Positions 16,789 through 62,850 of a DNA stretch of 64,000 nt are shown piece after piece. The DNA lies in the NCBI RefSeq assembly GCF_000150275.1, contig NW_002060961.1, forward strand, positions 787,128 to 851,127, given 5' to 3'. The notes beneath the pieces are model-generated. The model saw nothing but the letters and a program-made list of their open reading frames with translations, did not search any database and had not been told where the DNA came from. This stretch comes from Trichoplax adhaerens. Taxonomy: Eukaryota > Animalia > Placozoa. Numbering within the stretch: the stretch's first letter is position 1; the number at the start of each line of letters is the position of its first letter. A program made the position numbers and the translations under genes.

Positions 16789-16877
16789 AATGCCATTATA
16801 ATATAATTCTGTGAATTATACCCATTTATAATTATAGAAGCAATCAATAAATAATTCTAATATTACTAATGAACATC

Positions 16878-16955
16878 ATTATTAATAATAATAATAAATA
16901 ATAATAATAATAATAATTATAATAAGAATATTAATAATATTATTATAATAATATT
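16878..16955. repeat. Imperfect (AAT)n microsatellite in the LRR gene 3' region
   Basis: Run of taataataat units just after the stop codon. Confidence 0.85.
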
Positions 16956-23827: not shown

Positions 23828-25589
23828 TTATAATTTAAGAAAGCCATTTAAATTCTCGCCTTCAGCGGCCTCCATAAATTCTGTATAGCCCTAAGAAAAG
23901 TAACAATGATGCAATGAGTACGAATCACTCTAAACTGAAGTTATATTATCATGAATTCTATCAGTAAGATTGATCTAAACTAATTAAACGAGCGATATTT
24001 TAGTAGTATGCTTCTCCTTCGCACATTATAGTCTGTTACTCTAAACTACTGCAGAGATAAAAGGCCCACTCAATTATAGTTATACCATTTGTAAAATAGA
24101 GTATCATTCTACTTGGACATCATCACTATTTTTATAGTGTAGAGATACTCGTACAATTGAGATGAGCATTTATTTAATTCTAGTTCACTTTCTTACCCCA
24201 CAGTAGGCGCTATCATTGAAAAGTTGAGGGGGTAGCGCTTTAGGGTCGCCGCTCAGGTCTCGCATTTTTTTCTTCATCTCTTCACTGGTTGCAACATCAA
24301 CTCTTTCATACTGGATCTTTTTAGAATCTAGTATCATTTCAATTTGCTGCTGTGCCTTTTTGACCTAATAGGGTTAGATATTGTTGCATAAAGATCAGAT
24401 TTTTGAGCAATTCAGCCTTCCAAATTCAAGGAGAAAAAGGATAGAAAGTCTCAAATTTCAATACTTGTTTATTACCATCAATGATGATCAATTCTTCTCG
24501 TATACAGTATTAACACTAACTTGTCCAGTAAACTAGGACTCGATCACAACTGCCCAATCATAGCGAATGCTATAAAGATACCGTTTAATCCAAGTGTAAA
24601 AACTAAATACTTAACACGAGAGTTCTGCATGCATTATGCATCTAGTCGGTATACAGTATGAGGATTATGCATCCAGGGCATTTAACTCGATTATGGTTAG
24701 CCAATAATTAGTCAGTATCCATTTCGCTCGTTGAAAGTAATTGACACTACCGTGCTCTGTCCTATAACTTCAAAAGATTGTTATTTGGCAGCAAGCATTG
24801 TCGATATTCTTCTAGGAATACGTACTGTATGCTTATACTGTCCTTTCATCTTGAATACTATGGTCCTAAGTTGTACTTCGTTGTGAGATTGTAATATCAA
24901 TTCAGATTTGTCGACAAATAGACAGTGATGTTAGACTGCTAGACTGAAAGGTGAGTCAAATCTGTTGTGGTTAGTCCGATGCACTATCGAAAGTGAACCA
25001 TAGGCCATGGAAAAGAAATGCTGTCCACTCGTTTAATGTAACAAGTTTTTGGGGGGGACTATTCTTCTTACCGATAGCATAAGGGAAGTGAGATCCACTA
25101 TCAGACTCTTTCAAATACAGCTAGCGTATACGCCATTGTAGAGAAAGTTTATTGATGAGCTTAGTAGTTCATCCCAAAATAGTCCTGTCGTTGGACTATC
25201 TGATAGTTCATTATCAAAATGATCTAAATTAAGGGCAATCAGCCGATCTCGTTGTACACCAACAACAAATGATATTATTGCATTTGCAGTTCTCTTCAAC
25301 TGATTGATGCTAACACTATCGTAGCAAGTAAGTGATCTATATCATTCCTAATTCTAATTGTCATCGGGTGAAAAAGAAAAGAGATGGAGTGGAGACCAGG
25401 CCCCATTTTAGAAGCTGGACATGGAAAAGGGCTTATCCATCGATCATTGATGAATTAGAATCTAGCCCAATGGATAGATTATGACCATACACTCAATCAA
25501 CATATACAATCAGCTAGCTAAAGCTGGTAATAGCTCATCCTTACCTGCAAATTACCGGAAACAGATGACCAGTAGTAAGTAACCGTCAT
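23828..25589 (-). CDS. SH3BGRL: SH3-domain-binding glutamic acid-rich-like protein (thioredoxin/glutaredoxin fold), 91 aa
   Basis: Exons 25589-25545 (MTVTYYWSSVSGNLQ), 24364-24197 (VKKAQQQIEMILDSKKIQYERVDVATSEEMKKKMRDLSGDPKALPPQLFNDSAYCG), 23890-23828 (GYTEFMEAAEGENLNGFLKL*). All phase 0, GT-AG. LPPQLFN..YCG and terminal FLKL are SH3BGR family signatures. Confidence 0.93.
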
Positions 25590-25959
25590 TTTGGATCTTC
25601 TATGCCGCAGTTTACCTCTTGGAGAATCAACACCAAATAAACTTTACCGGCTGCCCAACTGCATATCTAGTAGGGCAATAGTTTGCTTTTTCCTGGCCCA
25701 AGTTGCAGAGGATAAACAATCCATTTTGCATAGTGAATGACTAGCCGAAATGATACGTATCAGCAACACCCTTTCAACTTGAAGCTGTATTTGCTTTACT
25801 GTCCGAAACACCACTGTGACTAGACTCACCAACGGGACTACGCCCTTGGTCTTGTGACTCCAGCTCCCCAGGGACTGAATTGCGGACATGCGCTGTGCGT
25901 CCGGACCTTGATCATGTCTTGCGCGATCATTCTCCAATCGATTTTCCTTTATCAACAAC

Positions 25960-26128
25960 GGACCTCCAAATGATTCCTAGACTGGAGTTTTTAGTCAATC
26001 AATATGCATAATCTTTCTGAATAAGTATGCAGGTGTTAAGAGATTAAGGGACCTCCAAATGGTTCCTAGACTGGAGTTTTTAGTCAATCAATATGCACAA
26101 TCTTTCTGACTAAGCATGCAGGTGTTAG
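25960..26128. repeat. Two-copy 89-bp direct repeat upstream of SH3BGRL
   Basis: ggacctccaaatgattcctagactggagtttttagtcaatcaatatgca... at 25960 and again at 26049 with a few substitutions. Confidence 0.9.
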
Positions 26129-27839
26129 CCAGTACTGTACTTTTTCGTACTTGATTTAATATGCTTAATGGGATGACTGATTTGTGTCATGTATAGGATT
26201 GTTTGTAAACCACCATACACTCTCCTATTTTCACTTAAAAATAAACTGCAATCTTTAAGATTAGGATTTAGATAACACAATCACAAGAACACCTTTCTAT
26301 TTTAGGATGGACGTCAGAAATTAGCTGTCTATTTGATGGATGTGATACAATGCCCGTTATAGAACGTTATTTTCATTGTTCTCTGCTTATAACGGTAATA
26401 ATATGGATAATAAAGTTTAGTTTAGTACACAAGCTCTGCTAAACTCTTCCTACTGTGTGTTATACTAAATCTTAAATAAAAGAAATCGTAACAGCAAGTA
26501 AATGTAAAAGCAGTCACTACAGGGACCTCAGAACTCTTTCTTTTAGCAGGAACTGCTGAAAAGAAAGAGAGATGGATTGTCCATGATTTTCATTGAAATA
26601 CGCAGGTTGACTATTTTGCAGATCATTTCGCTATATCGCAAGACTGGAAGCGTACATCGAATTAGTGTTGATATACTGCAGGCCGATTGAACGTCCCCGC
26701 TTTCTTTTTATAATTTGGGAAATCAGTTCAATTTAACTAAGGGAGGTTAAGGAAGGACAGGGTGCCGTATGAAACTGTCAGTCACAGTTATGATTTACTG
26801 TAGTAGGCCCCATGGGCGGTAGTCTCATTCTTTTAGTACTGTAACTGTGTACTTTAGTAGTCTCTGGTAAAATTTATTTTTAAACCATACATGTATATGA
26901 GGATTTGCAGAGTCGAAGATTGATATGGATTGTGAATTAATAATTAATTACAATATTATTTAAGGGATTATAGATTGCATTCTTGACTGAAGTATGTTTA
27001 CTGAACTGCACTCTAAATAGTGATTGCTTGCGCGCTGGAGTTCTGCGATAGTAATAATATGATTCCATATAGTTTAAACGTATCAATTGGAATTACATAG
27101 TCGCGCAGAGCCATCCTTCCAATAGTAGCCAACACCAATTCAAACATCTGCTACCTCTATGTCCTCATCTGACCAACTTTCTTGCAAGAATAGTTAGGTG
27201 CGCAGCATTTTAGCTCCTCTTTAAACAACTCCGCAGAATAAAGATAGCCTTCATTGATGAGGAGTATACCAAAGAAATACAATACTTGTAAAAATGGATG
27301 ACTAATTGCAATCTCTTGTATAAAGTGATGCTCAATTTTTTTATCCATATCACTAATATACTCGTATATCAATTGGTGCGAAAAAGAGATCTCAATAACC
27401 GTTTTGAACCATTTTAATTATCGTATACAATGATGCTTGTTGACGTTTATTGTTGCGTCGGTAATAATTTTAAAAAATGTTGCATTCTACGGACTGTCAA
27501 CAATATACATATTACCAAACTGATGAATGCAGCCATTGAAGATACCGCAATAAAAATAAAAAGAATAAAGGAAAGATATTAACAATTACGGCAAATTATC
27601 GCTGTCAACGTTCTATTGCAAAAAGTCAGTCTAGAACTAGAAAAGTAATCTCATAAGAAGTCATATAATGCATTTTACTCGATAGTGCAATAGTAGAATA
27701 TTAACTAAGAGTTCTCATTGATCATTCTACTAATAACGTAGTAAAATGACTGCTTGCGAAATGCAAACTTTACACTTGAACATTCAACATCCTTAGGCAT
27801 GATAAAAATTTGATAGATATAAAAAATGCAGAACAACGT

Positions 27840-30641
27840 TTATATTTGCAGAAGTAGTTCAATCGGGCAGTGATCGCTGCCTTCAATTTCTGAACGGATG
27901 ATGCTATCTGCTACATTTGGTATTAAATTTTTGGAAGTAACAAAATAATCCAGTCTCCTATACGTACAAAATATTCAAACGGATAACAAGTTCAATATTA
28001 CAAATACCGATCGTTTTTCGGCATAGAAGTTACGGCAAAATAGTTCAAATTTCTTACCATCCAATATTTTTAGATCTCGCATTGGACATATAGCTCCAAA
28101 AGGAATAAGCACTAGTTTTGTTTGGGTAAAAGTGACGAAAAGTATCAATAAATCCGCAATCCAATAATTTCCCAAATCCTTCCCTTTCTTCTTTAGTGAA
28201 TCCGGCAGTTTTTGTATTTGTTTTCGGATTAGCCAGATCTAAAATCAATTTACAATTCGCTTCAGTTATCTAGTAATAGTAGAAATGAACATCAGGCATT
28301 GAAGAGTAGCTATGACAAGGACATGACATAACAGTACTATACCAATTTCCAAGTGAGATACATTTAAATCCCCGCAAAGTATGATAGGCTTAACTTCTAT
28401 CAAGTCCTTGCAAGTATTTACGAAAATCAGCATCCCACTCTTGTCTATAATCCAGTCTAATAGAAATGATTATTATAATAAATTTTTACGGAACGTCGTA
28501 AATAGTATCATAATTACGTAAGCTGCCGATGCTTATTACCTGACTAACTTTCTACCTGAGTTTGGAATATCTATTACAAGCAACGAAGACACGCATACCG
28601 TTATAACAAATTGAACCACAATTTTCTAGCCATGACAATTGGTCTAATAGTTGGCAAACATTATGCAATAATCTGCCACTTACAAGCTCCAACGAGGAAA
28701 AATTTATCATATTCTGCCGTAATGACACGCCCTTCTTTATCGTGCTTTTCAATATCTGTACGAAATTTTATATGCAATATAATATTTGCTATGATTTAAT
28801 TAAAAATTATAATAAATAAAAGATGTACCGACGGAATAATAAGAATTTTCAATCATTTTCTGTCTACTGAAGGCGTTCTATTCGCACAGACAATATAGCT
28901 GATATTTTGTGTATGCGATAGTCAAAACTTACTGATTCCGAAAGTAACCTTTAGGGGCTTCACCTTTGATAGCAACCTGAATGAATATCAGGAGTCGTTT
29001 AATAAAAAGTTTATTCATACTACCAACTTATCTAGGTCTACGATATATTAGAAATCTAAACTATTGCACAGAACAGCAGCTACTAGTGTCATCAATAAAA
29101 TTGAGTTTGATCGTAATGATGGGTTAACAGTAGCGTTTTTTAATGGCGTCGTGTGATCGATAACCGATTGGCTAAGAAATACATATATCCTTACCCTGTG
29201 CTACTGTAGCCTTTTTGCTCTGCAGAATAAAAATAGGTATGGTAGCCATCTAGTTTAATTTCATTTGGTATCTCTGATTCGGCACATTTCGTTTCTTGCA
29301 GACAGATGATATCTATGTTACTGTCAGTCAGGTAGGAATGTCCATTTTTCTATGCCAAAATAAATAGCAAACACTAGAGCCTCATGTCGTCATCAGCTAA
29401 CATTGAAAATAGCAGGCAGGGTATTCTAGCTAGGTTGAAATAGACTCAACACTACACAGTGATATTATGATAATGGTAGAAGATACCAAATGATGATAAT
29501 TTGATCCTTTCAATGTTTGCACAGTATATCTAGCTTGTAGATTGGGTACAAGTATGACTGTGCTTCGTAATTAATAATAAGATAAATAAGAATCTTGCAA
29601 TTAGGATGTGCATTTACCTTGAACCATGCTTTTATACCGTTAACATTCCAAGAAGTAATTTTTGTATTCCAGTTTGAGCTACATATTTAGAATTAAAATA
29701 AGAATATTAATGTCTAGAGATAGGTTGCTTCAAAAGCAATTTTGCTTTATCATTTACTGTATGTCATCTACAGCAATTTACTTTTGAGAAAGAACGACAA
29801 TTTTAAGAACGGATCAAACTTGGTCCGCTTGAGCTATTCCATGAAAAGTGGCAGACATAGTCCCTGCTAGAACATTATCATAATTACCTCGATTTACCAT
29901 GAGATTGATTTTCTTTCTCTACAGACGATTGGTCATGTTTTATTTCCACAGTTGGCTCCTTATCCACCTAGATGTTAAATGATCTCATTAACAACGATTG
30001 TATCTCAGCACCATGTTTGTTACAGGCTTACATCTATCAGCCCAGCAGAAAACGGGTGATTCTTTAAAAGTAAAATCATACAAGTCTACGTCGGATCATG
30101 AATAAAGATCCATTTTGACACGATCCAGTATGTTCTTATAGAGATTTGAGAAAAAATACAGTATCTACTCGTATATTTTACAGTACTATACGAATATCTC
30201 CATGAATCTTGCAGTATCTTACAGTAAGTTTTTTTATTGGATTTTCATCCTACGCGAATATATTGCGATTTTCGAATGCAATGCTAATGTTATCAATTAA
30301 TTACTTCATTAATACTATGCTGAATTACAGCAATTTCACATTTGCTGCACCGTATTTAATATACTGCATATTACCGCAGAAGACTTGCCACCTTTAGCTT
30401 TGCTGCTATCCGCCGCTTTTTTAGCTTGCTTCTTTGCTTTCCCTACTGCAGTTACACTGGCCTATTGCATACAAACAAACACGTGGGAGATGATTCGGTG
30501 AATTCTGCAATGATTCTGCAAGCATTTGTAGTTGTAGCCTTATTTGAACATAATAATTGCATCAAGCTCGTATTTGCTTGCACACTGTGCAGAGTGGAGC
30601 TGGATCAACTAGCATGAGCAGCTTACCTTTCTCTTAGGCAT
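27840..30641 (-). CDS. APEX1: DNA-(apurinic/apyrimidinic site) endonuclease APE1, ExoIII family. 318 aa if one extra base in exon 9 is removed
   Basis: 11 exons: 30641-30627 (MPKRK), 30461-30375, 29967-29888, 29678-29618 ([13 protein letters not shown]), 29349-29195 ([10 protein letters not shown]...KGYSSTG), 28976-28933, 28755-28684 ([12 protein letters not shown]), 28570-28540 (YIPNSG), 28456-28343 (LDYRQEWD.../[13 protein letters not shown]), 28238-28058 (AGFT.EER, FWSYM.NAR.KNIGW), 27957-27840 (RLDYF...GSDHCPI). Exon 9 is 114 nt where its phases require 113. Confidence 0.95.
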
Positions 30642-31949
30642 ATTTACTAAGAATTGCAGGCACGTTTGTGTTTTACCGATGGGATAGTGCGGGTTAATAG
30701 TACGATTTCTACTAATAAGGACAGATCGTCGAATTAAGGTTAGCATGCAAATGATGTTGAGTAATGCCAATGATGCAATTGCACAGTCGAGCAGGGGACC
30801 AAAAAGTAGTCGAGGTCTGAGCGACCTGTGACCTGTACGATGAGCTCTACTACCGGTACAGTACAGTAGAAGAATGCCTGGACTGGCCACTCTTTTGGAC
30901 AGACAGACACCTGGCCAACTTTGGTCATCCAACACGTCATTAGGACAGTCCTTTAGGTATGTCGACAGTCGATTCCGAAGGAACTGATTTTTTCTAAATG
31001 AAGTAATATTATATTGTATAGTATTGCCTGTTACTAAGTTCTGCTTGGAAGCAGTCGCTTTAGATCGTCCATGTTCTTCAAGTTAGCACCAATGATTTCG
31101 AAAACAGACATGGAAGATCCATACTGAGTAGATATTTTCGGCAGTATACTGTAGGGTATGAAAAGTCTGTCCATCCGAGAAGAGGGTCCAGTCCAGGTAC
31201 AGTACTGTATTTCCAGCGGTCTGTACTGTACTGTACTATAGGCAGTACTGAACTACGGATAGTCTGATTCCGTCTGTCTGTGTCCATTGTTACCACAGCC
31301 AACAAGTCATGGGCGACCAGATGATGATAGATCGGTATAGCACGGTAGTAAGCGGAAATATGAACATTCTTGCTCAAAACTGCCGCACCAATGGCATTTG
31401 AGGTGCCTAAATAATTGCCAATCGCGCTTAAAGAATGACTAAGCGATAATTAAGGAACTTCTAAAGAGGAACTTCAAAAGCAATCGCGGCAACTAGGACA
31501 ACAATCAAGTCCTGCACAGTGTACAGTACTGAGTATACAGTATAAGGTACTGTAGTCAGTGTACTGTACACTGTGCAGCGGGTCTCATAATGACAATATT
31601 TCTCGACGTTTGAAAATACAGTAGATCCAAATTCCAATCGTTTATTTTACTATACGCATTTGGGTATCTATCTATTGGAAATAGAATGCTTTTTGCGACT
31701 GTATAATTTATATTACTAAAAAGTCTGCCCATTTGCTAATATTAGCAATTCAAGTTGACCGTATTTGTACAGTACAGTATGACTCTTACGCTTTTGGACC
31801 AACATAGTACCAAGTACTGTGTTTTGTAGTACCAAGTACTGTATATTACAGTACTGCATACTCTACGGTACTGTACAGGAATACTTGTACGACAAGCTGG
31901 CATCGACAGTTTGGTACTTGTGGGCCCAACTAGGCCCAACTGCTTCAAC
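30642..31949. promoter_or_regulatory. Putative divergent promoter region between APEX1 and GET1
   Basis: Head-to-head ATGs 1.3 kb apart, locally higher GC, dense CAGTACTG/CTGTACAG motifs. Confidence 0.6.
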
Positions 31950-34900
31950 ATGGCTTCCATCCACCTATCTTCCAGCGCTCTCAATCTCATCTCCATATTT
32001 CTTTATATCTTTTTTGTACGCTTTGCTTATCTTGTCATTCATAAACTCTTATTAACGGTGAGTTTTATTCTTTGCTCTTTTCCATATCATGCATTTCTAT
32101 CCTAGTGCATTTCTTAGTCCAAAGTCTTAAACGAGCTAGCCAGGTTGTCAATGTTGAATCAATCAATTGATGGTGAAGGAAACATTGTTGTAGACAATCC
32201 AACGCTGTAGTAATCAATCATAGCAGTAGAACACCTGTACTGTTAGCTCAATTTTCTTTCTATCCTTTAATTCAAGATAGTATGATAAAATATTGCATGG
32301 TAAAGTAATAACTCAATTCTATACGACCGAGTGGTATACGGTATTGTCTGCGTTCACTCTCATCCTATGGCACCGACATTAACTTACGAGTAGGAATGGA
32401 AATAAATGTCATGAAATAGTGCTTTACAATGGTCATTTTGCCTTTAGACACTTTGTAAGAAACATCAAGAAGAAGAATTAAATCAACAAATCCAAGTTTT
32501 ACGCCAAGAAATGCGAAATATTAGTATGGTGGTAAGTATCCAACTTCATTAATCGTACCCATGACAGAAATTTAAAAGAAAAAAAAAACCTCCCATTAGA
32601 TATCTCCAAAGTGGAATTACACTTTATAGTTTTCAAACCAAAGAAAGATCAATAGTCTTATTGAGCATGATATCCTTCGTTAGTGGAACAGTGTGTATTC
32701 TCCTTGCTCTACTTGTGTTAGTTGTTTAGCTCTAGTTGTAGCAAGGATGGCATGGGACGCGATGAAACATCGCCTTACGTATTAATTGAAAATTTCCTTG
32801 TGAAGGCTTTGTGTATTTTATTAACAATTCAACACTGTACCATGAGAAACAGTCAAAAATTGGGTCACTTAACTAGTGAAATACGTTCATGATGAATCAA
32901 TTCATCATTTTCGTATCTGAGACATGCATTACTTGCAGGCCATAATGACTCGTCAATTTGCTACTTTATTCAATAATTGCTTTAAATAATACTTTGTGAT
33001 TTATTTCATGGATTACAGGACAACTTTGCTCCTTACTCAAAGTTAAATAGAAAAGTGGCTAAATTGTCATCCGATTACGAAAATCTAAGTAAGTGACGTA
33101 TTTAATGCAAATAAAATTCAACTCAGAGGATAGAGCTCAGCGACTGGACAAAAATTTCTACTGTTAAGATTGTTGCATAGCTTGGGTCAAACTTTGCCAA
33201 AGCGAAATGATGATTAGTTTTAATTACACATTGATCAAGTGATTCAATATCTATCGAAAAGCCTTTGTTGTAAGTTTTTGCTGTTATTGTCCATTTAGTT
33301 GACTGAAATGTGTCACCATTGAATTCATAACTTAATCACAGTTTTCAATTGACATTTTACCGCACGAGAGAATGATGATTAAAACTAGATAGATGCAGTT
33401 ATTATTCCATAGAAATAATCCGATCAATGATGAGAAATTTCATCGGAGAATGGAAAGTATCCTAGCAAGATAGTTATATCTTTAAATTCAAAAGAGAGCC
33501 TACTTGCATTGAATGTACAGTAATTGGTGTTTTATCTAGATAAATTAATCATAACTGAAATAGAAAGGACTTCCAATTTGCAATACTGTATTGGGTAGCC
33601 TGTTTAAACTAGATGTTGACCCAAATGTAGGAAATTGTATTAGATTGAAGCAGCTGAAAACATACCCTAAGGCCTAGTAAATACTGTCAATGGACGCTCC
33701 ATTGTGGGTGGGTTTAACTTTACAAATATATAGCAAAAAAAATTTGGCATTCGTGGTACTGTATATTGGTAGAATTGTTATTAGAGTAAATCAAAATTGC
33801 TTCACTTAGCCTACTGATTAGAGTGCTGATGATTAAGTCATCATCGAGACGTGTCTTAGTCAAGGCATTGTAAAAAATTGTTATATGAATTGAGGATCTA
33901 ACCTGACAACAGATTTGCCACAACATAATATCTATTGCAAATAGACTGTGATAGCAATTGAATAGTGTTTGAAAAATATTTGCAGTATTTCATTCTCTTC
34001 GGCGCAGTGTCAATAATGACTCTAACAACAATTGACCACAATTTTATTTCAATGAGTTCTTCCCATACAATACGATAGAATGCAGATTTACCATATAGTA
34101 GCCAATCTGTATCAAATGTTATTACGATTATACTGTACTTACTTAATTATACAGTACAGTATATTGCAATGACCAACAATCCGCAATTGCAAATGTATTT
34201 CTTAACAATATTTACATATGAAGAAAGTGCGTCATCGGTACACTCTTTTACCACGTGATGTCAATTTGTTGGCCACGCAAGATCATACTTCTATGAGTAT
34301 TCATTTAAATTTTATAATTACAAAATTGAATAAAATTGAAACGTTTTCCTAAATAAAATTATCATCCAATTGATGATGTGATATCTCGTCTATACGCTTC
34401 CTGATGCCATGTTGTATTTGCTCTACATGAAAGTCCTAGTTTTAAATTATTAAAAGATATTTTACCTTTTTTAGGTACTAAAAGAAAGAAGATGGAATTT
34501 AAAATTAATGCGGCATGTTTCCTTGTTTATGCTGTTATCACTGTAAGTGTTACATTGGCACTATACTATACTCTTAACTATAAATATTATTATTTAAATG
34601 CACTTTGTATAGGTACTTTATGCGACTGGTTTACTTGTTAATGAGTTTTACATGATGGTGGAGTTAGTAATACTGTGTTTATTGATCAAATGCATTAGAA
34701 AACAGCTACACACTATTAATTGATATGAAATTGATGTTAGATTGGCGTTCATGCTCGCCTAACATTTATTTGGTACAAGCATCCCTTGTTGCTTATGCCT
34801 GGCGATTGGATGGTGCCTATAAATATATTAATATCTGTTCCAACTGGTAAAGCAGGTACATAGGCAAAAAATGATACTATGAATGTGAACAGTTTTATAG

Positions 34901-35108
34901 TTTCAAAAATCAAATATAGAACTCTGAGTGTATTCGATATTTTAAAGATCAATTGGATGTTGATAGCTGTTAAGAAAAAATGATACTAAAGATAATAACT
35001 TGAATTTGTTTTAATATATTCAATCTTGCAGGAGCTATTGGAATTTGTTCATGGTTAGCAATCTGTCAATCAGTTGTCTATCATTTTCCATTCAAATTAA
35101 TTTTGTAA
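31950..35108 (+). CDS. GET1: Guided entry of tail-anchored proteins factor 1 (WRB/CHD5 family), 173 aa
   Basis: Exons 31950-32057, 32448-32531, 33019-33088, 34475-34542, 34741-34855, 35032-35108 (522 nt). N-terminal TM, coiled coil LRQEMRNISMVDNFAPYSKLNRK (human STVNMMDEFARYARLERK), P..W..P...L.S.PTG.AGAIGI.SW..IC C-terminus. Confidence 0.92.
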
Positions 35109-37496
35109 TGGCGAAATGAAGAACATAGTTAAGCAAAGATTTATGACTGTACACGTGATAATTTATCATTTCGAATACACCAAAATTTTAAAGGACTCAT
35201 AATTGTGTAATTAATAAAATTAAGTTATAAATTTTCTAATTACTTTTATCGACAGTATATACCCACTATGTTACCTAGATAGTAAACTTGTTGTTATCTT
35301 ATTTATGCGTCAAAAATATTGAAATGTAACTGTTATGATAAGCATACCTAATGTATTAAAGTATCATAGTGTAAAGGTCTATAGCCGTAAACATTTTTGA
35401 AAATAACATAAAATAGAAATTTGGATGCCGATAAATAATTTTATAGTAAGTAGAAAATAAACTTAGATGCTTACTATAAAATTATATCATTAGTAGCATC
35501 AAATATTGCAAAATTTTGATTGAACTCGGATTAGCAAATAATGAAATGTTAGTTTCTATATCTATGCCTTGAAATTATTTATAATAGTTTCTCGTCATAT
35601 AATTCAACTATCGAAGGAATATATATTAATTTAAATATGAATCGCACTGTAAAAGTTTTATAGTAAAACTGTATGTATTCACCTTTACGTAAACAACTGT
35701 ATCGAAAATGATCTGAAGAAAAGATTAAAGATTTTTATTTACTGTAATATCAAATGCTCTTATAAAAGATAAGAAAATCTAGATAATAAATCGTCCCTTT
35801 ATTTCACTGATCATACGTCTTTAATGTTTAAAACTGCAGTATCTTAGATTATTAGCGCTAATAATGCTTCGATTCAATTCTCAACACTTCGCAGAATTAT
35901 TATTACAGAAACAGAAAAATTTAGATATATTTTTGTAATATGATTTGTGCTATGCCCTGCTTTGGATATGAACATGATCCCAATGATAGATTGATTTTTA
36001 ACATTAGAGTGATAATAGATTAGCGTTCAATGTTGTAGTAATAAAAATGAGACGTTGTATGACATAAAAAATCAAATATCATGAATACACTTGTTAATAT
36101 ACGATGTGAACGAGAATTAGACCGATGCAAGCATTGATGGTTATTATATGGTGCTTCAATACTATCAGATGCTTTGAAGCTAATAAATATTACAATAAAC
36201 AGATCATAAGTGTAAAATGCTTCTATCATCCATGCCTCAAATTTACACCCTTAAAATTGAGCTTTGAAATTGTTTTGCAAATAATGTGATTATACTTCTA
36301 GAGCGGATTTGAGACATGGCTTACAATTCCTTTCTTTCATATACACAGATCATAAGTAGTCCTTTCGTATCCTGTCTAGCTTTGTTGCCTCCATTAAATT
36401 TTTTAAACGATGCATGAAAATATAAGTAAAATTATAAGCTACATACCTACAGTTGTTACAAAATGAAGTAATAATTGCTATTCATTATATAAATATTTAT
36501 GGTATAGGACAAGTGTTACTCGTATTTCTACGATCCATGCTTGTAATTAATTTCCGTTTTATATGTAAGGACTTACGTAGAATTTATTATAGCTTAATAA
36601 GAGTGTTGCCAATAACTAAGAATGAATTGTCTAAATTACTACTTGAAAATAAACGGCAGAAAGCCGTTAGAAAATAAAGCAATAGACTCGCGGTGTTTAT
36701 TCAGAGATGGTGTATGCTTCAAAATTATTCCTAAATTAAGGTCTATGAATATCAGTAGTAGTACAAGCTATTACGTAAACTATCATGTGATTGTATGTAA
36801 GATATTGGTACCCATATGCATTGACAGAATTGGTAAAATAAATCAATAGGAAACGAGATTAATACAATTCATGCGCTTCTTTCTTAGGCTACATATTCTC
36901 GTCAATGGTAGACACAGATGGTGCTAAACATATGAATGTTTGTATATATCGAATCTATGCCAGAGGATACGTTTATACTGCTGATATATGCATTTTTTTT
37001 ACTGATGGATTGTCAAATTAATTATTACAAGCCAATCTTAGGAAATAGAAGTGACCGAATGAAAAAGTAGAGGTGAGAAACTACGATTGTTAGGTATAGG
37101 CGTAACCAGTCATGGTCTATAGGTGTTACATGATAGTCATATAAAAGCATAATTATTATTGATATTAGCTGAATTCGCACATCATGTCCTTCGAATAAGA
37201 GTTCTGATTATATCGATTAATGCTATACTCAGTCTGTCAGTAGAATATTCCAACTCATTATCTTTTTGCTTGAAACTTTTAATATAGTATTTCCCGTATA
37301 CTTCAGTCTACCGCAGTGTTATATTTCTATAGAAATAAGTTAACAACTGTGATGGACTTCATCAGTCTTTAACTCAGTGAAAATTTGTCAACACAAACAT
37401 TTTATGTATTGCATAACTGTACATAATTAACAGTCACTAATAGTTGATTTATTCTATTTTTTTTACATATATTTCAAAGTAATAGATATGATTCCC

Positions 37497-38315: not shown

Positions 38316-39504
38316 CTTCAGTATTATGGAGATTAATATAAGAATATGCATATGTAGCTTTAATGGATATAATTTTTCTTATAGATCATCTCTATCGAAT
38401 TTACTCAATGACTATAAGCTACATCCTTGAAAAGTTGTTCTAAATGAAATTGATAGATAAATTATTGTCATTAAACTGCGATTATTAGATGTTATACGAG
38501 ATCGCCTAAGGCTAATTAATTATTCGAACAGTCATTGTATAGTTTATAAATTAAAATTCTTTATCCTCTACAAGATAATTTCGCACGAAATGATGCGACT
38601 ATACACATACAGCAATATTGCTTATTTGTACCACGAATATTATATAACGTATCTTACTTCAAAATAATTCGATTATCGTAAGCTATGTCTTAAAGAAATT
38701 AATGCCAATCTATCGAAAAATGACAAGAAAAGTATAGATATCAAACGCAACAAGTGATACGACCATGACAACAGGAAGTAATGACAGCATGAATACTTTA
38801 CAAACAATCATGTACAATTTCCATCATCGTAGCAATAATGATATCTAAAGTGAACAATAAGTTCTCAAACAATAGCGAAACAATAGGATATAATTTACAT
38901 TCACTAAGAAAACAAATTATCTATAAGTGTTCAGCAGGTGATGATTGAAAAGAAGTGATTGGAGAAGTATCGTAGATATAGATACACATAGAAGTTAGAC
39001 GTATTAGCATATTTCATCCGAAATAGCTTTAATATAAAATAGCGAACTAATTAGAGCAGTTACTATTTTTAATTATCACGAATATGTTAATAAGCGCCAT
39101 AGCGATAGATGGTAAAGAAACAAGTTAATCTTGAAAGTTGCCTAGGTGAGAAGAGTAAGTAAATTAAACTTCAGAGATGACTAGATCTTATAAAGTAGTT
39201 ACCATTGATTTCACTTCTAGATTTTAGCAGATTGAAGCTAGAAGAAAGATTTAAATCTTTATTTTCTAAAGTTAGGAAAGAGTAATTGATTGGTTAACAT
39301 TGTATTTATTTTAAATCTTTAGAGATCAAATAGTGGATTAAGTGGACCTTGAGGAATACTTTGGCTAAACTTTTATCGATAGTAATCTGTATCCAAGAGA
39401 AACGATATCGATAAGTCATCAACTGTTATCTTAAATACTGGAAAAGTGAATTAGAATCGAGATATTACTTTTGTGAAACGTTTTATAACTACTTCACATC
39501 ATCA

Positions 39505-40624
39505 ATGGGTAGTCGTCCTAGTAAATCAAGCGTGCCTGAAGCAGTTAAATCTCTCCGCCAGAAAGGCCATAATTATTTTAATGCTAGAAATTACAATCAA
39601 GCACGAAAATGTTACGAACAAGCGTTAGATAAAATTGAGGCAATCACATATGCTAGTATCGAGCAAGATCAGTTTCGATGTGATGTCTATGTTGATATTT
39701 GTGATACATATCGAGGACAAGGTAAAAACTCAAAAGCGGATAAATTTAATCAGATAGCCAGAAAAATTGCACTTGAACTCGATGACGGCATTCGAATTGC
39801 TAAATGCTTAGATAGACAAGGCGCTATCAAAAGTTTGAAAAATGATTTTACTGGCGCATTGGAGTATTTGAAAGGCTCGCTGGAATTAAAATTGAAAATA
39901 TTAGGCGATCATAATTTAGATGTTGCTGCCTCCTATTATAACTTAGGCAATATTTATCAAAGGCAAAAGATTTATGATAAAGCTGTCTCCATGCACCAGA
40001 AAGCCTTAGATATTCGTTTGACTCTAAGAGGACGTAATCATACTGATGTTGCTAATTCATACGATCTTATAGGAAATGCTTACCGCCGTCAAAATAAACA
40101 CATCGATGCTTTGTTAATGTATCAGAATGCTCTAACTATAAGACAGGAATTACTTGGAGAGTATCATGCTGATGTCGCCGATTCATACAACAATATGGGA
40201 AACGCCTATAAGAATCAATCTATGTACGATAATGCCCTGTCTACTTATCAGAAAGCTTTGGAAATTTATATGAAAATAAGTGGAGAAAACATACCAGAAG
40301 TGGCTTTATTATATCGTAACATGGCCAATGTCTACGAGAAACAGGATAATACTAATGATGCTGCAGCAATGCACAAAAAATTGACTGCTGTAAAGGAGAA
40401 ATTAAAATCTGAAGCAGAGAATAGAAAGAATGTTCGAAACTCGAAAAAACAAGAAGGTATATTCACTATTGACTTCTATTTACTCTTAACTTATTGACTG
40501 CTGAGTTGTTTTTCTATCAATGCGGCATTCTACTTGGTTGATCATAACAAAACTGATTTATTTGGAAATAGGATTAATTGAAGAGGAGACGGAAGTTATG
40601 ACTGACGATGAAACTTTCGACTGA
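39505..40624 (+). CDS. Tetratricopeptide-repeat protein (42-aa kinesin light chain/NPHP3-type TPRs) with N-myristoylation motif
   Basis: Exon 39505-40456 carries repeated H.DVA.SY.N.GN.Y..Q..Y..AL..YQKAL.I units. Phase-1 donor G|gtatat joins exon 40572-40624 (GLIEEETEVMTDDETFD*). The 3' end of the model is less certain. Confidence 0.85.
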
Positions 40625-44080: not shown

Positions 44081-44901
44081 ATGGACGATCTAGTAACGAA
44101 ATTAATTGTCCCACAAGAGGCAAAAGGTGTTCAACGATAAAGGTAATGAAGATTATAATTGGAGGAATTATTCTTTGGCACGGTTTTATTGTAAACAGGC
44201 CTTGAAAAAAGTTCAAATTCTCTATACGAATGCTGTTTGCGATCAGTTAACATGTCATTTTTAACTTCTAATTTCTGATACGTACCGAAGAGAAAATTAA
44301 TGGAAAAATGCATGAAAATATTTACGGAAAGCAGAAAACTAGGCTAATAAACTTGATGACAAAGTACAGATTGCTATTTGCCTGGATATTCGAGGGATGG
44401 TAAATCTTTCAAAAGAATACTATTGTAAAGGATAGCAATATTTAAATCGTTCACTTCGATTAAAATTACAAGCACTAGGACAAAAAAACATTAATATTAC
44501 TGACTCGTACTATTACATTGGAATCACCAGTTTTCATCAATGTTATTATGACCATGCACTAGCTATGTTTTGGCAAGCCCTCACTATTTTGCAAAGGATG
44601 CCTGATCATAAATCTAAAATTGCTGGATTAAGAAATAATATGGAAGTTATTTATCATCATCGATCAAGGTATCAGGATGCTCTGGAACAGTATCAACAGG
44701 CGCTACGTCTTCGATTACGACTATCAGAGGATATCTATTCGATGTTATCGGACCCTACAAAAATATTGGACTAGTTTATGAGAATCAAGGCCAATACGAT
44801 TATGCATTAAATATGTATAAAATGGCTTTAGATATGGAGTCGAAACATGCCCGTGCAAATTATTCAGCTACAAATGCGGGATTTGCTACTTTAAAAGAAT
44901 A
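44081..44901 (+). pseudogene. Degenerate paralog of the upstream TPR gene
   Basis: Translation KGNEDYNWRNYSLARFYCKQALKK...DQLTCHF*LLISDTYR...*...LDDKVQIAICLDIRG...*QYLNRSLRLKLQALG..N.NITDSYY.IG is collinear with the 39505 protein but has at least 5 in-frame stops plus frameshifts. Confidence 0.85.
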
Positions 44902-46419: not shown

Positions 46420-46598
46420 AATGAGTTTTTAGCACGAATGAAAGAATTCTTTTTTAATCTCTAGTCGGTACTAGTAAGATGGAATTCAAACTCGGTTCGT
46501 TAAGCTATATAATTGTGGCAATGAGTTTAGGGGCTAATGAAAGAATTCTTTTTTAATCTCCAGCACAGTACTAGTAAAATGGAATTGAAATTTGGTTA
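46420..46598. repeat. Two-copy direct repeat, about 100-bp period
   Basis: aatgagttt...aatgaaagaattcttttttaatctc...gtactagtaa.atggaatt occurs twice. Confidence 0.85.
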
Positions 46599-47341
46599 TT
46601 TTCTCCTTCAGTTAATCTCAAATCTTCAAGAATAACCTTTCAAAGTTTCAATCATTGACAACACATGTTTAGCCTGAAGCAATCGATTTATTGATTGCCA
46701 CTGATAGACATCAGCAGCAATAGAACTTGTTATTATATAATCTACATTGATCGAGTACCAAATTCTTCTTTTCCATGCTTTGACAATTCAATCTGTACTA
46801 CGCCCTGTACATTAGAGTTATAGAATAAATTGAAATTTGAAAAATGATCTAGTTAATTTAGGCGAAATAGCGTAGATATGTGTGTTATATTATTATCTCT
46901 TTATATTGATATGGATTATCGATGAATTGCTTGAACTAGGGATAAACTTGTTAAAGTAGACTCTTCTACTGATCGTAAAATGAATGAAATCGAGATTTAA
47001 CATTTTAATTAATAACTATTTTCATAGTAGAGAACGCAATGATTTCTATAAGTACATTATTCAATTAGCTCTAGCTATTTCAATGACGAAATAGGACAGC
47101 CAATTTAATTTTACACAATTCATTTTTAGAAGTTATATTCAATTTTTCCAAATCAACGATTAATTATTAATACATTAATGGAAATTTTCATCATCAACAA
47201 ATGGTATAGAATTGGAAAACACTGCTTTAATTAAATAAGAATTTCCATAAATTGGATATGAATAGACATCAACCATCGATTGATTTGCTACATCGATGTA
47301 AAAAGCTATAAATGATAGCAAACGGATTGCAATATCTTATT

Positions 47342-50300
47342 TTATAAGTTAATCTCTTCTAAATCATCATCGAATCCGAAATCTTCTATAGCTGTTTTAT
47401 TGCTTTTGGCAATGATATTATCGTTTTTAGCTCGAGGTCTACCTAATGTTACTCGGTCTCCATTGGATTCTTTTTTACCCCAGGGATATGATTTAGATTG
47501 ATTTTCAGATAGATCAAAAGGACCATCGTCGTCATTTTTATCGTCTATGGATTGGATTGCGGTCGTTGTTTTAGAGCTTTTATTGGGCTTAGTATGGAAA
47601 AAATCATCGTCATTATCGCCAAAAACCGAGGATGATTTACTCTTGTTGTGATCGTTTCTTGATCCGCCTTGTGGGGAATCAAAGAGACCATCGCGATTTC
47701 GACTTTTTCCTCTTGAGGTAGGATTACTCCTATTTGCTGGTATTTGAAATGGATTCTCATCGAGATCATCATCATCATCGTCATCATCATCATCTAATAA
47801 GATTGTATCCTTTTTGCTCGTTGTATACGATTTCTTTGGTTTTGTATCGAGTAGGAAATCTTCACCATCGTCTCCACCACCGAAAACATCGATTGGGTCA
47901 TGATTACTTGGTGTCTTGTTAGTATTGCCATAAGCTCGACGTCCATGAATTGGTTTTTGTGGAACTCTAGGGGATAAATCTTCATCCATGGCTGAATTCG
48001 GTTTACTACCTTGCTTGCTGTCATTGGAATTGAGTGTAGTCGATTTGGAGCTTTTACTATTTTTAGTGCCATAGTAATCGTCGTCTGTTGATAAGGCTGG
48101 ACGTCCTTGGTGGAGGTTTTCTGTTTTAAAATTGGCTTTATGGCCACTTTTAATTGCATGATCATTGCCAGTGCCTCGGCCAGAATCGTCATCAATTTGC
48201 TCTGGTGGCGATGATAGAGTAATTTTATCTCTTACTGTATCATTTTTATAGGTTTCGCTTGCTCGTAAACGTGCCAAGAGTTCATCTTTTTTGCGGCGTT
48301 CTTCAGCCGCTTTTTCTGCAGCTAAGCGCTCTTCTTCTTGGCGCATTCTTTCTTCCTCTACTTGTCGACGTTGTGCATCTTCTTCGCGTTGTCGTCGCTC
48401 TCGTTCTTCTCGTTGTCTTTTTTCTTCTTCATCTATTTGACGTCTCTCGTCTTCCAATCGGCGCCTTCTTCTTTCTTCTTCTTGCCTTTCAGCTTCTAAT
48501 TTTGCTCGTCTTTCTTCTTCATCACGTCGTAACTGCTCATCATGGCGATGTCGTCGTTCCTGTTCTAATTTTCTCTGTTCATCTAATTCTTTCTGCCGCC
48601 TCTTCTCTTCCTCCTCCTTCCTTCTTAATTCTTCTTGGCGTAACTTTTCTTCCTCTTTTTGTTTCTCCTTCTCCTTGGCTAAACGTTTTTCAATCTCTTC
48701 ACGTTCTTTCTGGATATTATGACTGCCATGTTTTAACGAAGTACTTAATATCGAATCAATCGTGTCTTTCTCGCTACGATCTGTTAATAATTTACCATTG
48801 CCCTTAGATTGCCTAACGCTGTAAATATTGAGTAGGTCTAATTCTCGTTCTTTTTCCTGTCGGAGAAAAATCAAATAAGCAATGGTTACATTTCATGATG
48901 ATGTTGAAGAATAGCGGAAGAAGTAACATATCTTGAGTTGATCCTATACTGTAATTTTATACTACGCGTAAGTTGCCTTGATAATTATTTTGATTCTCAG
49001 GGCTAGTTTATGACAGCTTATTCCATGCTACGGTATCACTCTGCAGCTTATTTAGATAGAATGCATTTGCAAAGTGTTTGTTGTAGAGGCAGCTAATATT
49101 ACAAGTGTTGCATAATCGTGTAAGGGCTAGTGGAAAGGAATGAAGATTTAGTAGGAACTGATGAAGGTTTGTAGCAAGTGCAATAGATTGGATATCCTTC
49201 TAAGCAGGGTTCTATTCTACTTCATTCTTGGTTCAGGAGCAATTTATAGCCGCTGTATCTTCATTTAAACTTCGACCTTCTCATCAATTCAATAGAATCA
49301 CGAATTATATTTCTATTCCATGTTGGAAAATTATCGAGTGGGGCTGTATAACTACAACTTTTAAAACAGTAAGAAAGACTTTAATAAATGGATCACTTGG
49401 TCTTAATTGATTGCACAAGGTTATCGTAATACTGCTCATGGATTGACTGAGGCATTTTACCTACTCCTATAGCATGCCTGATCAAGAAATGAATTTACTA
49501 ATAAAGTAGTGCTATATCTTTGACTTACTTTTAATGCATGTTGTAGTTGCCTGTTCTCTTGAAGGGCGGAATCAAGTGTTTGTTGAGTATGTTTAAATCG
49601 CTTGCCTTGTTCTTTCATATCTCGGTTTTTAAAATTAATTTCAAGTTCTTTCGATTTTTCTAGATCCTGTATTAGATTAAGGGATATGATTCAATTAAAT
49701 TGCAGTAACTTATACCAGGCTATATTTTAATATAAAATGCTAATGTCTAGAATCATTTTACAGCAAGGCATTGATCGCATATTTCACTGCGACTGTTAGC
49801 ATTCACAATCTCGATCTATCAAACATGAAATTGCGATAGACTTTGCCATTAAATTAAGAAGGTTTGTCTTTTAATATGCGAAGCTAATATTATGCCACTG
49901 CTGCAGCTCTTAATTTTATCCTGTAATTAATCTGTGGTTTAGAATTGAAACGCGATCGATCGTGAACTAGAGAGGCTATCTGGACTTTGCATTTAAATCC
50001 AGAAATGAATATTGATTGTGTTTAAATATTGGATGATCTGATTCGCTATGGTACCGCAAATTATCGTTAATATGAATAATTCAATGGGTGAATAAAAAAC
50101 GATTACCGATGGAATAATCATGTTCCTACTAATAGTCTAATACGAGTATTGCATTAGCGTAGAATAGCGTAATTAAAAAGAAAAATCAAGTTACACTTAT
50201 GATGTTGATTAGACTAACCATGATTTTCTTGTCTCTGTCTGCTAATTTCTGTTTAAGTTCATCTACTTCCGTGGATAATTTTTCTCTCTCAGCCAAATTG

Positions 50301-51921
50301 TTATCCTCTACTAATACCTTTAATTTTTTATTCTTGTCTTCTAGCTTCCATAATCGATCGTCTTTTTCCTTCATTTGTTGCTGAGAAGTCTGTAGATTCT
50401 CTTGGGTTTTTCTTAATCGTTCCCGTAAATTATTGACTTCCCTCATATGATTTTGAATTAAGCTTGGTAGCTCGGCATCTTGACCTTCGTATTTAGTCAA
50501 GGCTTTAGACTGTCGTTGCTGGACATTTTTAAGGATTTTATTTTCTTCTTTTAGGTCTTTAATTTGTCTTTTCATGTCGGCCAATTTATCTTGTAATTCG
50601 GTAATAACACTACGATTGGCATTAAGTAATTGTTGAGCGACAAAATCTTTCGGTTTACTTGTGTAATTATTGGTAGCACTTCCAGCATAGTGACGTTGAA
50701 GTCCGGCTACTTTTTTGGCATTTTTGGATTTATTTTTTCCTTCTAATCCAATGACAATAATAAAAAAAGTCATAATTAGAATTTTTAAAATGGATCTATC
50801 GTGATAGTATGGCTATTTCTGCCTTAATGACTTTGCAATTTCCCTCAAAATAGGTTGTGGTTATATTTAATTTTGTATCCATCCAGTGATATTAATAAAC
50901 ATTAAAATAAAGGTAAATCTATATTAATGATTGCCTAGGATAACGTAGGAACGGGATAACTTGGACAGAAACGAATGATGCTATTAAATATAATTATAGA
51001 AGACAAATTTTGTATTAGTTGACGAAACTACTAGTGTAATGTATCTATCAATTTTTCCTATATGTAGAAATGGAATAAAAATTTCTTTTCGTTCCATCGG
51101 TGGCTGTATCAATGCACTAATCGGACGCATTTCTTAATTTGCAATGTCTGTGATGATACTCAAACATTGAACAAAACTAAAAAAGAGCACAATACTAATT
51201 AGCCATTTTTTTTTTGTCTAAGATTGAGTTTGGCCTATACAGTAGGTATTAATTTAATGACAACAAGTTCAGATTGGCAAGTTAAAGCTGTCAACGTCAG
51301 TACTAAAACGTGTTGTAGGTTAGGGATTTACCAGATTATTCAAACTGAAAAAATTTCCATATTTCTAGCGATTGCATATGTACTCTTGCTGTGAGTTCAT
51401 CATCTTGCTATCATTTTGTAATTAGTAAGCAAAAAATAGGACTATTATCATACTGCTGGTTCATCATGAAAGCAGATCATCAAAATGAGTCAGTTTACGT
51501 CTATTTAAACCCAAACAGTCCTAGAAGAATTTATCTTTAATTTATGTTACAGTCTATTCTGTTGTAAATCATCATGTAAAAAAGTTTTTTATCACTTTAA
51601 CACTTGATGACTACCCGTTCTTGGTATTTCTAACGCCATGATTTGATTATACCAATCATTTTAGCAAAGCAGGATTGACCTACTTACAGAGATACATGAC
51701 TTACTTGCTCTATTGGTTGAAAGCTTGCTGGTAGATCCTTTAAGGCCTTTTCGAGGCGATTTTGCTCGCTCAGGTGTTCTTGATCTTGATCGACTACGTA
51801 AGCTATTACCATCTTCAAAGTCATCGTCATAAGTAGAATAGTCATCTTCACTGTAACTTTTCGATGATTGCCGTGAATCGTAAGATGCCATTCCAACAGG
51901 AGTTATCTGCTTCTCTTTCAT
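47342..51921 (-). CDS. LCA5: Lebercilin (LCA5/LCA5L family ciliary coiled-coil protein), about 787-797 aa
   Basis: Exons 51921 (or ATG 51891)-51705, 50742-50219, 49666-49529, 48856-47342, phase-consistent. Lebercilin domain ITELQ...ENKILKNVQQRQSKALTKYE...LRERLRKTQE, EKERELDLLNIYS (human KEKERELDIKNIYS) and acidic C-terminus DDDLEEINL. Confidence 0.9.
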
Positions 51922-62817: not shown

Positions 62818-62850
62818 TCTAGCACTAGAGATGAAGAAGATCAAGTTTAC

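What the first reader, a model, noticed from the sequence alone, without database searches (positions are those of the whole stretch)
23828..51921. Ancient microsynteny: SH3BGR-like, GET1 and lebercilin within 28 kb, as in human 21q22 and 6q14
Seen: SH3BGRL(-), GET1(+) and LCA5(-) lie together, separated only by APEX1 and a TPR gene/pseudogene pair. Known: human 21q22.2 has GET1(WRB)-LCA5L-SH3BGR as neighbours, with an annotated GET1-SH3BGR readthrough, and 6q14.1 has LCA5 next to SH3BGRL2. GET1 and LCA5 converge here as human GET1 and LCA5L do, while SH3BGR has moved to the other side. Inference: if the host is a placozoan, the linkage predates bilaterians and may reflect shared regulation or function, such as membrane-protein delivery to cilia.
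Basis: partly seen in the sequence, partly recalled or inferred. Interest (0 to 1): 0.85.

Follow-up and report, generated by a model that had tools for sequence, protein, structure and literature searches.

The report
Old SH3BGR-APEX1-GET1-lebercilin gene neighbourhood
In this placozoan genome the single-copy SH3BGR, APEX1, GET1 and lebercilin genes lie within 28 kb. This is a real leftover of a gene neighbourhood already catalogued in bilaterian animals, so it is older than was recorded, but it is an ordinary kind of finding.

Summary
SH3BGR (24.2 kb, -), GET1 (31.7-35.3 kb, +) and lebercilin (47.3-51.9 kb, -) are each the only match to their family in the 105.6-Mb assembly, which fits Trichoplax adhaerens. 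RNA contigs give six GET1 exons (173 codons).

The reading is partly right.
- The linkage is inherited, not chance. Amphioxus has lebercilin(+) GET1(-) APEX1(+), the mirror image of the window. Four unidentified animal contigs show the same. Sea stars and a scallop have lebercilin head-to-head with SH3BGR, as I recall for human 21q22.
- It is not new as a block. Robert et al. 2022 list SH3BGR-LCA5-WRB (Lingula) and APEX1/Rrp1-WRB (sea star) as block 5970, dated "Bilateria novel". The window moves that date to before the placozoan-bilaterian split.
- APEX1 is a member of the block, not a spacer. It sits head-to-head with GET1, with 5' exons at most about 720 bp apart.
- The block is often broken. 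I found no partners within 10 kb in a coral (Acropora) or a sponge (Dysidea), and no GET1 next to scallop lebercilin.
- The idea of membrane-protein delivery to cilia is untested.

The scan holds 28 other microsynteny notes on this genome; none shown covers this block. Interest is modest.

The parts
23828..24364 (-). SH3BGR-family gene. The verified core exon is 24188-24364.
   Evidence: PF04908 at 59.3 bits, above the cut-off of 21. Only locus in the genome. Closest solved chains are SH3BGRL3, E 3.5e-13. 68% identical to the SH3BGR exon of L005.
28057..30966 (-). APEX1 (AP endonuclease 1) gene. Coding pieces are 28057-28269, about 28269-28469 and 29194-29349. RNA-supported exons are 29606-29678, 29888-29965, 30373-30460 and the 5' exon 30626-30966. 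The 3' end below 28057 was not mapped.
   Evidence: PDB APE1/APEX1 chains at E 1e-22 to 1e-28. Exo_endo_phos match. Introns read CT..AC on + (that is, GT..AG on -) in three runs.
30967..31684 (.). Interval between the outermost RNA-supported 5' exons of APEX1(-) and GET1(+). Putative shared bidirectional promoter. It carries a cluster of GTACAGTAC/GTACTGTAC palindromes.
   Evidence: Contig pieces end at 30966 (APEX1 side) and begin at 31685 (GET1 side) (table 8). Contigs cannot fix true transcription start sites.
31685..35300 (+). GET1 (WRB/CHD5) gene with six exons: e1 up to 32056 (ATG at 31950), e2 32447-32530, e3 33018-33088, e4 34475-34542, e5 34741-34851, e6 35028 onwards (stop at 35106-35108). 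Total 173 codons.
   Evidence: Five GT..AG joints seen in 2-4 runs. The exon frames agree by arithmetic with the open frames listed. CHD5 matches on e3 (27.8 bits) and e5 (16.2 bits). Only CHD5 locus in the genome. e5 matches the annotated amphioxus CHD5 gene.
39505..40497 (+). Single-exon TPR_12 repeat gene (330 aa) inserted between GET1 and lebercilin. Not part of the conserved block.
   Evidence: TPR_12 at E 3.4e-47. No counterpart between GET1 and lebercilin in L004, L005, L006, L007 or L010.
44106..44899 (+). Second, diverged TPR-like locus with a broken frame (pseudogene or intron-containing paralogue).
   Evidence: TPR_12 at E 9.5e-8. 34% identity to the TPR gene with a frame change near 44720. 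Stops in frame.
47345..51921 (-). Lebercilin (LCA5/LCA5L) gene. Pieces are an N-terminal exon near 51664-51921, the Lebercilin-domain exon 50189-50812, an exon around 49460-49690, and a 516-codon C-terminal exon 47345-48892.
   Evidence: PF15619 at 126.6 bits, above the cut-off of 34.3. Only locus in the genome. 458 relatives at E<=0.001 in the representative library. The C-terminal exon is collinear with the L005 lebercilin.

Best explanation
This is a retained ancestral microsyntenic block of four unrelated single-copy genes: SH3BGR, lebercilin, GET1 and APEX1. It was inherited from at least the last common ancestor of placozoans and bilaterians.

The conserved core is lebercilin tail-to-tail with GET1, and GET1 head-to-head with APEX1. 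In bilaterians SH3BGR sits head-to-head with lebercilin. In Trichoplax it has been moved to the far side of APEX1, and two TPR loci have been inserted between GET1 and lebercilin.

Shown here: the gene identities, single-copy status, order, strands, splicing, and the same order and strands in amphioxus and four other animal contigs.

Inferred: the block persists mainly because the APEX1-GET1 pair shares a short bidirectional promoter region, and because the intervals are too short to offer many harmless breakpoints in slowly rearranging genomes. A common job of the four proteins is not needed to explain it.
For: Each family has one locus in the genome, and the Pfam and PDB identities agree.

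Amphioxus L004 carries Lebercilin(+) 10001-28455, CHD5(-) 30634-32964 and Exo_endo_phos(+) from 33375. That is the mirror image of the window's APEX1(-) GET1(+) lebercilin(-). The GET1-APEX1 gap there is about 410 bp.

Unidentified animal contigs show the same pattern:
- L005: SH3BGR(+) 9164-9340, lebercilin(+) from 10001, GET1(-) 17256-17776, APEX1(+) from 19794.
- L006 and L007: lebercilin(+), GET1(-), APEX1(+).
- L010: lebercilin(+) then GET1(-) 13997-14392.

Two sea-star (Asterias) assemblies have Lebercilin(-) next to SH3BGR(+) SH3BGR(+). Pecten has an SH3BGR-like exon(-) 5864-6106 in the gene beside lebercilin(+).

In the literature, block 5970 lists Lingula SH3BGR-LCA5-WRB as consecutive genes, and Acanthaster Rrp1(APEX1)-WRB-BRWD3. 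Human WRB, LCA5L and SH3BGR share a TAD and an eQTL.

In Trichoplax the APEX1 and GET1 5' exons are at most about 720 bp apart.
Against: The block is not universal.
- Acropora digitifera has no GET1, APEX1 or SH3BGR within 10 kb of lebercilin, although 5.4 kb of that locus is N.
- The Dysidea avara SH3BGRL3-like gene has other neighbours.
- Pecten has no GET1 within 10 kb downstream of lebercilin.
- Amphioxus has no SH3BGR within 10 kb upstream of lebercilin.

Trichoplax itself tolerates 12 kb and two inserted loci between GET1 and lebercilin, plus a relocated SH3BGR. This argues against strong constraint on those joints.

Contigs cannot fix transcription start sites, so the bidirectional promoter is inferred. 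I recall human APEX1 on another chromosome; that was not checked here, but if so the head-to-head pair can be broken.

The organisms behind L005-L007 and L010 are unknown, so they say nothing about the age of the block.
Confidence: 0.8

Rival explanations
1. A purely neutral leftover. The genes are still neighbours only because placozoan, amphioxus and some other genomes rearrange slowly, and no selection holds any of the joints.
For: The block is broken or not detectable within 10 kb in coral, sponge and, for GET1, scallop. Trichoplax carries insertions and a relocated SH3BGR. The scan holds 28 microsynteny notes on this genome, so such leftovers are common here.
Against: Order and both relative orientations of lebercilin-GET1-APEX1 are identical in Trichoplax, amphioxus and three to four other animal contigs. 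The lebercilin/SH3BGR head-to-head pair recurs in sea stars and a scallop and, as I recall, in human. The GET1-APEX1 gaps are very short: 410 bp in amphioxus and at most about 720 bp here. Head-to-head pairs with short gaps are the class Irimia et al. 2012 found enriched among conserved pairs.
Confidence: 0.3
2. A functional module. The genes stay together because they are co-regulated for a common task, such as inserting tail-anchored membrane proteins (GET1) for cilia (lebercilin).
For: In human one SNP raises expression of WRB, LCA5L and SH3BGR together, and the three share a TAD (PMC6088800). A GET1-SH3BGR readthrough name is in use.
Against: The tightest conserved partner of GET1 is APEX1, a DNA-repair enzyme with no tie to cilia. 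GET1 and APEX1 are housekeeping genes by established knowledge. The linkage is lost in several ciliated animals.
Confidence: 0.1
3. Chance or convergent proximity within one ancestral linkage group, not inheritance of the local arrangement.
For: Coral and sponge lack the arrangement within 10 kb.
Against: My estimate for four given genes within 28 kb is about 1e-10 genome-wide, or about 1e-7 within a 10-Mb group. The same order and strands recur in amphioxus and other animals. Robert et al. report no blocks in any shuffled genome at the metazoan-ancestor node.
Confidence: 0.02

Closest known systems
Microsyntenic block no. 5970, 'Bilateria novel', in Robert et al. 2022, BMC Genomics 23:143 (PMC8851819, Additional file 4)
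   Same: It holds the same gene families. In Lingula anatina, SH3BGR, LCA5 and the WRB orthogroup are consecutive genes. In Acanthaster planci, Rrp1 (AP endonuclease) and WRB are in the block.
   Different: The authors dated the block to the bilaterian ancestor, although Trichoplax adhaerens was among their 49 genomes. The window shows all four families within 28 kb in that genome, so the block is older. The copy of the file held here is cut, so further species rows could not be read.
Human 21q22.2 GET1(WRB)-LCA5L-SH3BGR and 6q14.1 LCA5-SH3BGRL2
   Same: The same three families are neighbours and share a TAD and an eQTL. GET1 and lebercilin converge; the human orientation is from my own knowledge.
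   Different: As I recall, human APEX1 lies on another chromosome and SH3BGR lies beside LCA5L rather than beyond APEX1. The human intervals span tens of kb. Vertebrates have two to four paralogues of lebercilin and SH3BGR, against one each here.
Conserved ancestral microsyntenic pairs (CAMPs) of Irimia et al. 2012 (PMC3514665), for example HSPE1-HSPD1 with a bidirectional promoter
   Same: The APEX1-GET1 pair is head-to-head, keeps its orientation and has a very short intergenic distance. This is the signature that paper ties to shared promoters.
   Different: The main text of that paper does not name these genes, and its supplements are not held. Promoter sharing is inferred here, not measured.
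General conservation of local gene order between Trichoplax and human (Srivastava et al. 2008, as cited)
   Same: It is the same kind of observation in the same genome.
   Different: That paper could not be read here. Whether this particular block is listed there is unknown.

Membership tests
Conserved microsyntenic block (definition of Simakov/Robert et al.) | At least three orthologous genes, each separated by at most five intervening genes; collinearity not required | tested here: met
   Four families (SH3BGR, APEX1, GET1, lebercilin) with two intervening TPR loci in 28 kb. The definition is quoted.
Conserved microsyntenic block (definition of Simakov/Robert et al.) | The same gene set is linked in other, distant lineages | tested here: met
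   Amphioxus, Lingula and Acanthaster, Asterias, Pecten for SH3BGR-lebercilin, and four unidentified animal contigs.
Conserved microsyntenic block (definition of Simakov/Robert et al.) | Members are one-to-one orthologues (same orthogroups) | tested here: inconclusive
   Each family is single-copy in the genome. The lebercilin domain tree puts the window with a second placozoan-like sequence, outside the vertebrate LCA5/LCA5L split. No orthogroup analysis or trees were made for GET1, APEX1 or SH3BGR.
Pre-metazoan or pan-metazoan block | Present in sponges, ctenophores or cnidarians as well | tested here: not met
   Acropora digitifera has no partners within 10 kb of lebercilin. Dysidea avara has no partners within 10 kb of SH3BGRL3. 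The flanks were limited to 10 kb.
Bidirectional-promoter gene pair | Head-to-head genes whose transcription start sites lie within about 1 kb | tested here: inconclusive
   RNA-run contigs reach 30966 for APEX1(-) and start at 31685 for GET1(+), a gap of at most about 720 bp. In amphioxus the annotated gene ends are 410 bp apart. Contigs cannot show true start sites.
GET1/WRB (Pfam CHD5, PF04420) | Match to the family profile above the curated cut-off, and a protein of about 170-180 residues | tested here: inconclusive
   Single exons score 27.8 and 16.2 bits, against a cut-off of 29.3 for a whole protein. The six RNA-supported exons add up to 173 codons in one consistent frame. Exon 5 matches the annotated amphioxus CHD5 gene at E 6e-5. 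The joined protein was not searched, by rule.
Lebercilin (PF15619) | Match above the curated cut-off | tested here: met
   126.6 bits against a cut-off of 34.3.
SH3BGR (PF04908) | Match above the curated cut-off | tested here: met
   59.3 bits against a cut-off of 21. SH3BGRL3 is the closest solved chain.
APEX1 / exonuclease III-type AP endonuclease | Close match to APE1 rather than to other Exo_endo_phos enzymes | tested here: met
   The exon 28057-28269 matches zebrafish and human APE1 chains at E 2e-25 to 5e-22. APEX2 was not compared separately.

The most novel reading that the evidence does not exclude
The four genes form a regulatory unit older than Bilateria. On this reading APEX1 and GET1 have been driven from one bidirectional promoter since before the placozoan-bilaterian split. 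Lebercilin, SH3BGR and GET1 would share cis-regulatory input that couples membrane-protein insertion to cilium maintenance, so that breaking the block costs fitness in most lineages.
Probability: 0.1. Interest if true: 0.55.

Novelty: new member of a known kind. Interest (0 to 1): 0.3.

Why it matters
It corrects the age of one published microsyntenic block from "bilaterian novelty" to at least the placozoan-bilaterian ancestor. It also shows that APEX1 belongs to that block, and it supplies an RNA-supported GET1 gene model (173 codons) for this genome.

The case suggests that block-dating studies can miss blocks in early-branching genomes, though why this one was missed was not tested. The conserved head-to-head APEX1-GET1 pair is a simple candidate for testing whether shared promoters preserve gene order over more than 600 million years.

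It does not open a new kind of biology.

Tried and rejected
1. A word-index protein search with the amphioxus lebercilin domain gave only four hits and no non-bilaterians.
2. Acanthaster lebercilin isoform X2 and Acropora millepora isoform X2 are not on record as gene products, so no context could be fetched.
3. Supplements of Irimia 2012 and Simakov 2013 are not held. Supplements of Zimmermann 2023 and Schmidbaur 2022 do not mention these genes.
4. The organisms behind contigs L005-L007 and L010 (ENA metagenome assemblies ERZ19489113, ERZ21784910, ERZ25073868, ERZ25072854) could not be identified. In the FastTree domain tree arthropods also fall outside the main bilaterian clade. I therefore do not claim these contigs are non-bilaterian.
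5. Other members of block 5970 or of human 21q22 were looked for nearby. DHDDS (PF01255) and PSMG1 (PF16094) both lie on another scaffold, C1410.
6. A paper search for an APEX1-WRB bidirectional pair found nothing.
7. Only exon-wise searches and frame arithmetic were used.
Full report
**What is in the window**

The window is G000:C1396:787128-851127 of an assembly of 105,631,681 bases in 1414 contigs. Eitel et al. 2018 state that 70.3 Mb is 66.5% of the Trichoplax adhaerens assembly, which gives about 105.7 Mb (PMC6067683). The genome is therefore very probably T. adhaerens. An earlier follow-up note of this scan names it so as well (not independent).

Six-frame scans of the whole assembly find exactly one locus for each of the three families:
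- SH3BGR at window 24197-24367(-).
- CHD5/GET1 at 33016-33171(+).
- Lebercilin at 50222-50641(-).

Exon-wise Pfam scans agree. SH3BGR scores 59.3 bits and Lebercilin 126.6 bits. CHD5 scores 27.8 and 16.2 bits on two small exons. An Exo_endo_phos exon lies at 29194-29349(-), a strong TPR_12 gene at 39415-40494(+), and a weak TPR locus at 44436-44771(+). The exon 28057-28269(-) matches solved APE1/APEX1 chains at E 1e-22 to 1e-28.

Ten of the longest remaining open frames between the genes have no Pfam match.

**Gene models from RNA**

Contigs of three RNA-seq runs and one further run were laid on 29400-35300.

GET1(+) has five GT..AG introns: 32057-32446, 32531-33017, 33089-34474, 34543-34740 and 34852-35027. 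The exon frames fit the open frames seen. With the ATG at 31950 and the stop at 35106-35108 they add up to 173 codons. I recall human GET1 as 174 residues.

I did this by arithmetic only. The exons were not joined for any search or fold.

APEX1(-) has introns 29679-29887, 29966-30372 and 30461-30625. Its 5' exon runs 30626-30966.

The outermost RNA-supported pieces of the two divergent genes are therefore at most about 720 bp apart (30966 against 31685). Contigs cannot fix start sites, so 'bidirectional promoter' is an inference. This interval also carries the cluster of GTACAGTAC/GTACTGTAC palindromes flagged in another first-reader note.

The lebercilin gene spans about 47345-51921(-). Its 516-codon C-terminal exon is collinear with the lebercilin of contig L005.

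The second TPR locus is a 34%-identical paralogue with a frame break. Whether it is a pseudogene or an intron-containing gene is open.

**Is the block already known?**

Yes, for bilaterians. Additional file 4 of Robert et al. 2022 (BMC Genomics 23:143, PMC8851819) lists block 5970, class 'Bilateria novel'.
- In Lingula anatina the genes g12645 (SH3BGR), g12646 (LCA5) and g12647 (the WRB orthogroup) are consecutive.
- In Acanthaster planci the block holds BRWD3, DHDDS, Rrp1 (an AP endonuclease, the APEX1 counterpart), WRB and TSPAN33.

Their blocks need at least three orthologues with at most five intervening genes. T. adhaerens was among their 49 genomes. The stored file is cut, so I could not read all rows, but the class label means they found no outgroup copy.

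The window meets their definition with four families and two intervening loci. The block is therefore older than they recorded. I could not test why it was missed; records of this genome are withheld from the look-up tools.

**Other genomes examined here**

A full HMMER search with the Lebercilin exon gave 458 relatives. Context look-ups then gave the following.

| Genome or contig | Arrangement found |
|---|---|
| Amphioxus (L004) | Lebercilin(+) 10001-28455, CHD5(-) 30634-32964, Exo_endo_phos(+) from 33375. This is the exact mirror image of the window, with 2.2 kb and 0.4 kb gaps. |
| L005 (ENA, unidentified animal) | SH3BGR(+), lebercilin(+), GET1(-), APEX1(+) within 11 kb |
| L006, L007 (ENA, unidentified animals) | lebercilin(+), GET1(-), APEX1(+) |
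| L010 (ENA, unidentified animal) | lebercilin(+) then GET1(-) |
| Two Asterias assemblies | Lebercilin(-) next to two tandem SH3BGR(+) genes |
| Pecten maximus | An SH3BGR-like exon(-) in the gene next to lebercilin(+); no GET1 within 10 kb |
| Acropora digitifera | No partner within 10 kb of lebercilin (5.4 kb of the locus is N). Lebercilin clade C was identified as coral. |
| Dysidea avara (sponge) | SH3BGRL3-like gene flanked by a kinase, an unknown gene and a cullin |

I could not name the animals behind L005-L007 and L010. The domain tree is too weak to place them. They show that the arrangement is widespread, but say nothing about its age.

**Inferred history**

The commonest order is SH3BGR - lebercilin - GET1 - APEX1. 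Lebercilin and GET1 are tail-to-tail, and GET1 and APEX1 are head-to-head. In sea stars, scallop and (by my recollection) human, SH3BGR and lebercilin are head-to-head.

Read in reverse, Trichoplax has lebercilin(+), two TPR loci, GET1(-), APEX1(+), SH3BGR(+). The core is intact. SH3BGR has moved to the other end, and 12 kb with two lineage-specific TPR loci has been inserted in the tail-to-tail gap.

I recall that vertebrates kept GET1-LCA5L-SH3BGR and LCA5-SH3BGRL2 after genome duplication and moved APEX1 elsewhere. The papers read here support the human neighbourhoods, a shared TAD, a shared eQTL and the readthrough name.

The Trichoplax SH3BGR exon is closest to SH3BGRL3 among solved chains. 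Because the gene is single-copy, it is best seen as pro-orthologue of the whole vertebrate family. I also recall that each human SH3BGR paralogue lies near an HMGN paralogue, which fits an origin by genome duplication. This was not checked.

**Chance**

My estimate for four given genes falling within 28 kb of 105.6 Mb is about 1e-10, or about 1e-7 within one 10-Mb linkage group. With the same order and strands in other phyla, chance is not a serious rival.

**Mechanism**

I commit to inheritance plus local cis constraint. The APEX1-GET1 joint has the hallmarks of a shared promoter: head-to-head genes, conserved orientation and gaps under 1 kb. Irimia et al. 2012 link exactly these features to conserved pairs.

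The tail-to-tail and SH3BGR joints look weaker. They are broken or stretched in Trichoplax, scallop, amphioxus, coral and sponge. A purely neutral leftover remains plausible (about 0.3).

It is weakened because GET1's most faithful partner is a DNA-repair gene.

**Verdict**

The linkage is real, inherited and pre-bilaterian. It belongs to a known kind, and for bilaterians the block is already catalogued. What is new is its presence in Placozoa, the membership of APEX1, and the GET1 gene model.

The scan holds 28 microsynteny notes on this genome, so such neighbourhoods are common here. Interest is modest.

Noticed in passing
window 30850-31870 and 9100-9330: Clusters of the palindromic words GTACAGTAC and GTACTGTAC. 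The first cluster coincides with the interval between the RNA-supported 5' exons of APEX1 and GET1. This fits the other first-reader note that such motifs mark promoters.
   Followed up: partly
window 56539-56820(-) and 62683-63036(-), gap 62768-62817: Two near-identical open frames encode a small cysteine-motif protein that looks like COA5/PET191 by eye (not tested). The second copy is interrupted by the only run of N in the window. This may be an assembly duplication around a gap.
   Followed up: no
window 30600-31950: RNA-run contigs labelled organism B differ from the window at many positions and by small indels in the APEX1-GET1 5' region, yet keep the same splice joints. This is probably a related placozoan strain or species.
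   Followed up: no
L013:10001-20212 and L014:10001-21395: Two sea-star (Asterias) assemblies each carry two tandem SH3BGR genes (91 and 92 aa) next to lebercilin.
   Followed up: no
L007:15700-17500: The introns of the APEX1 gene of this unidentified animal are filled with (CA)n/(TG)n microsatellites.
   Followed up: no
G000:C1410:4034712-4035958 and G000:C1410:6149920-6150075: DHDDS (a member of block 5970 in the sea star) and PSMG1 (a human 21q22.2 neighbour) both lie on scaffold C1410, about 2 Mb apart, not on the window's scaffold.
   Followed up: no
P0001 (Logan contig, 6.3 kb): The closest relative of the window's Lebercilin exon is 80% identical and unnamed, presumably from another placozoan lineage.
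   Followed up: no
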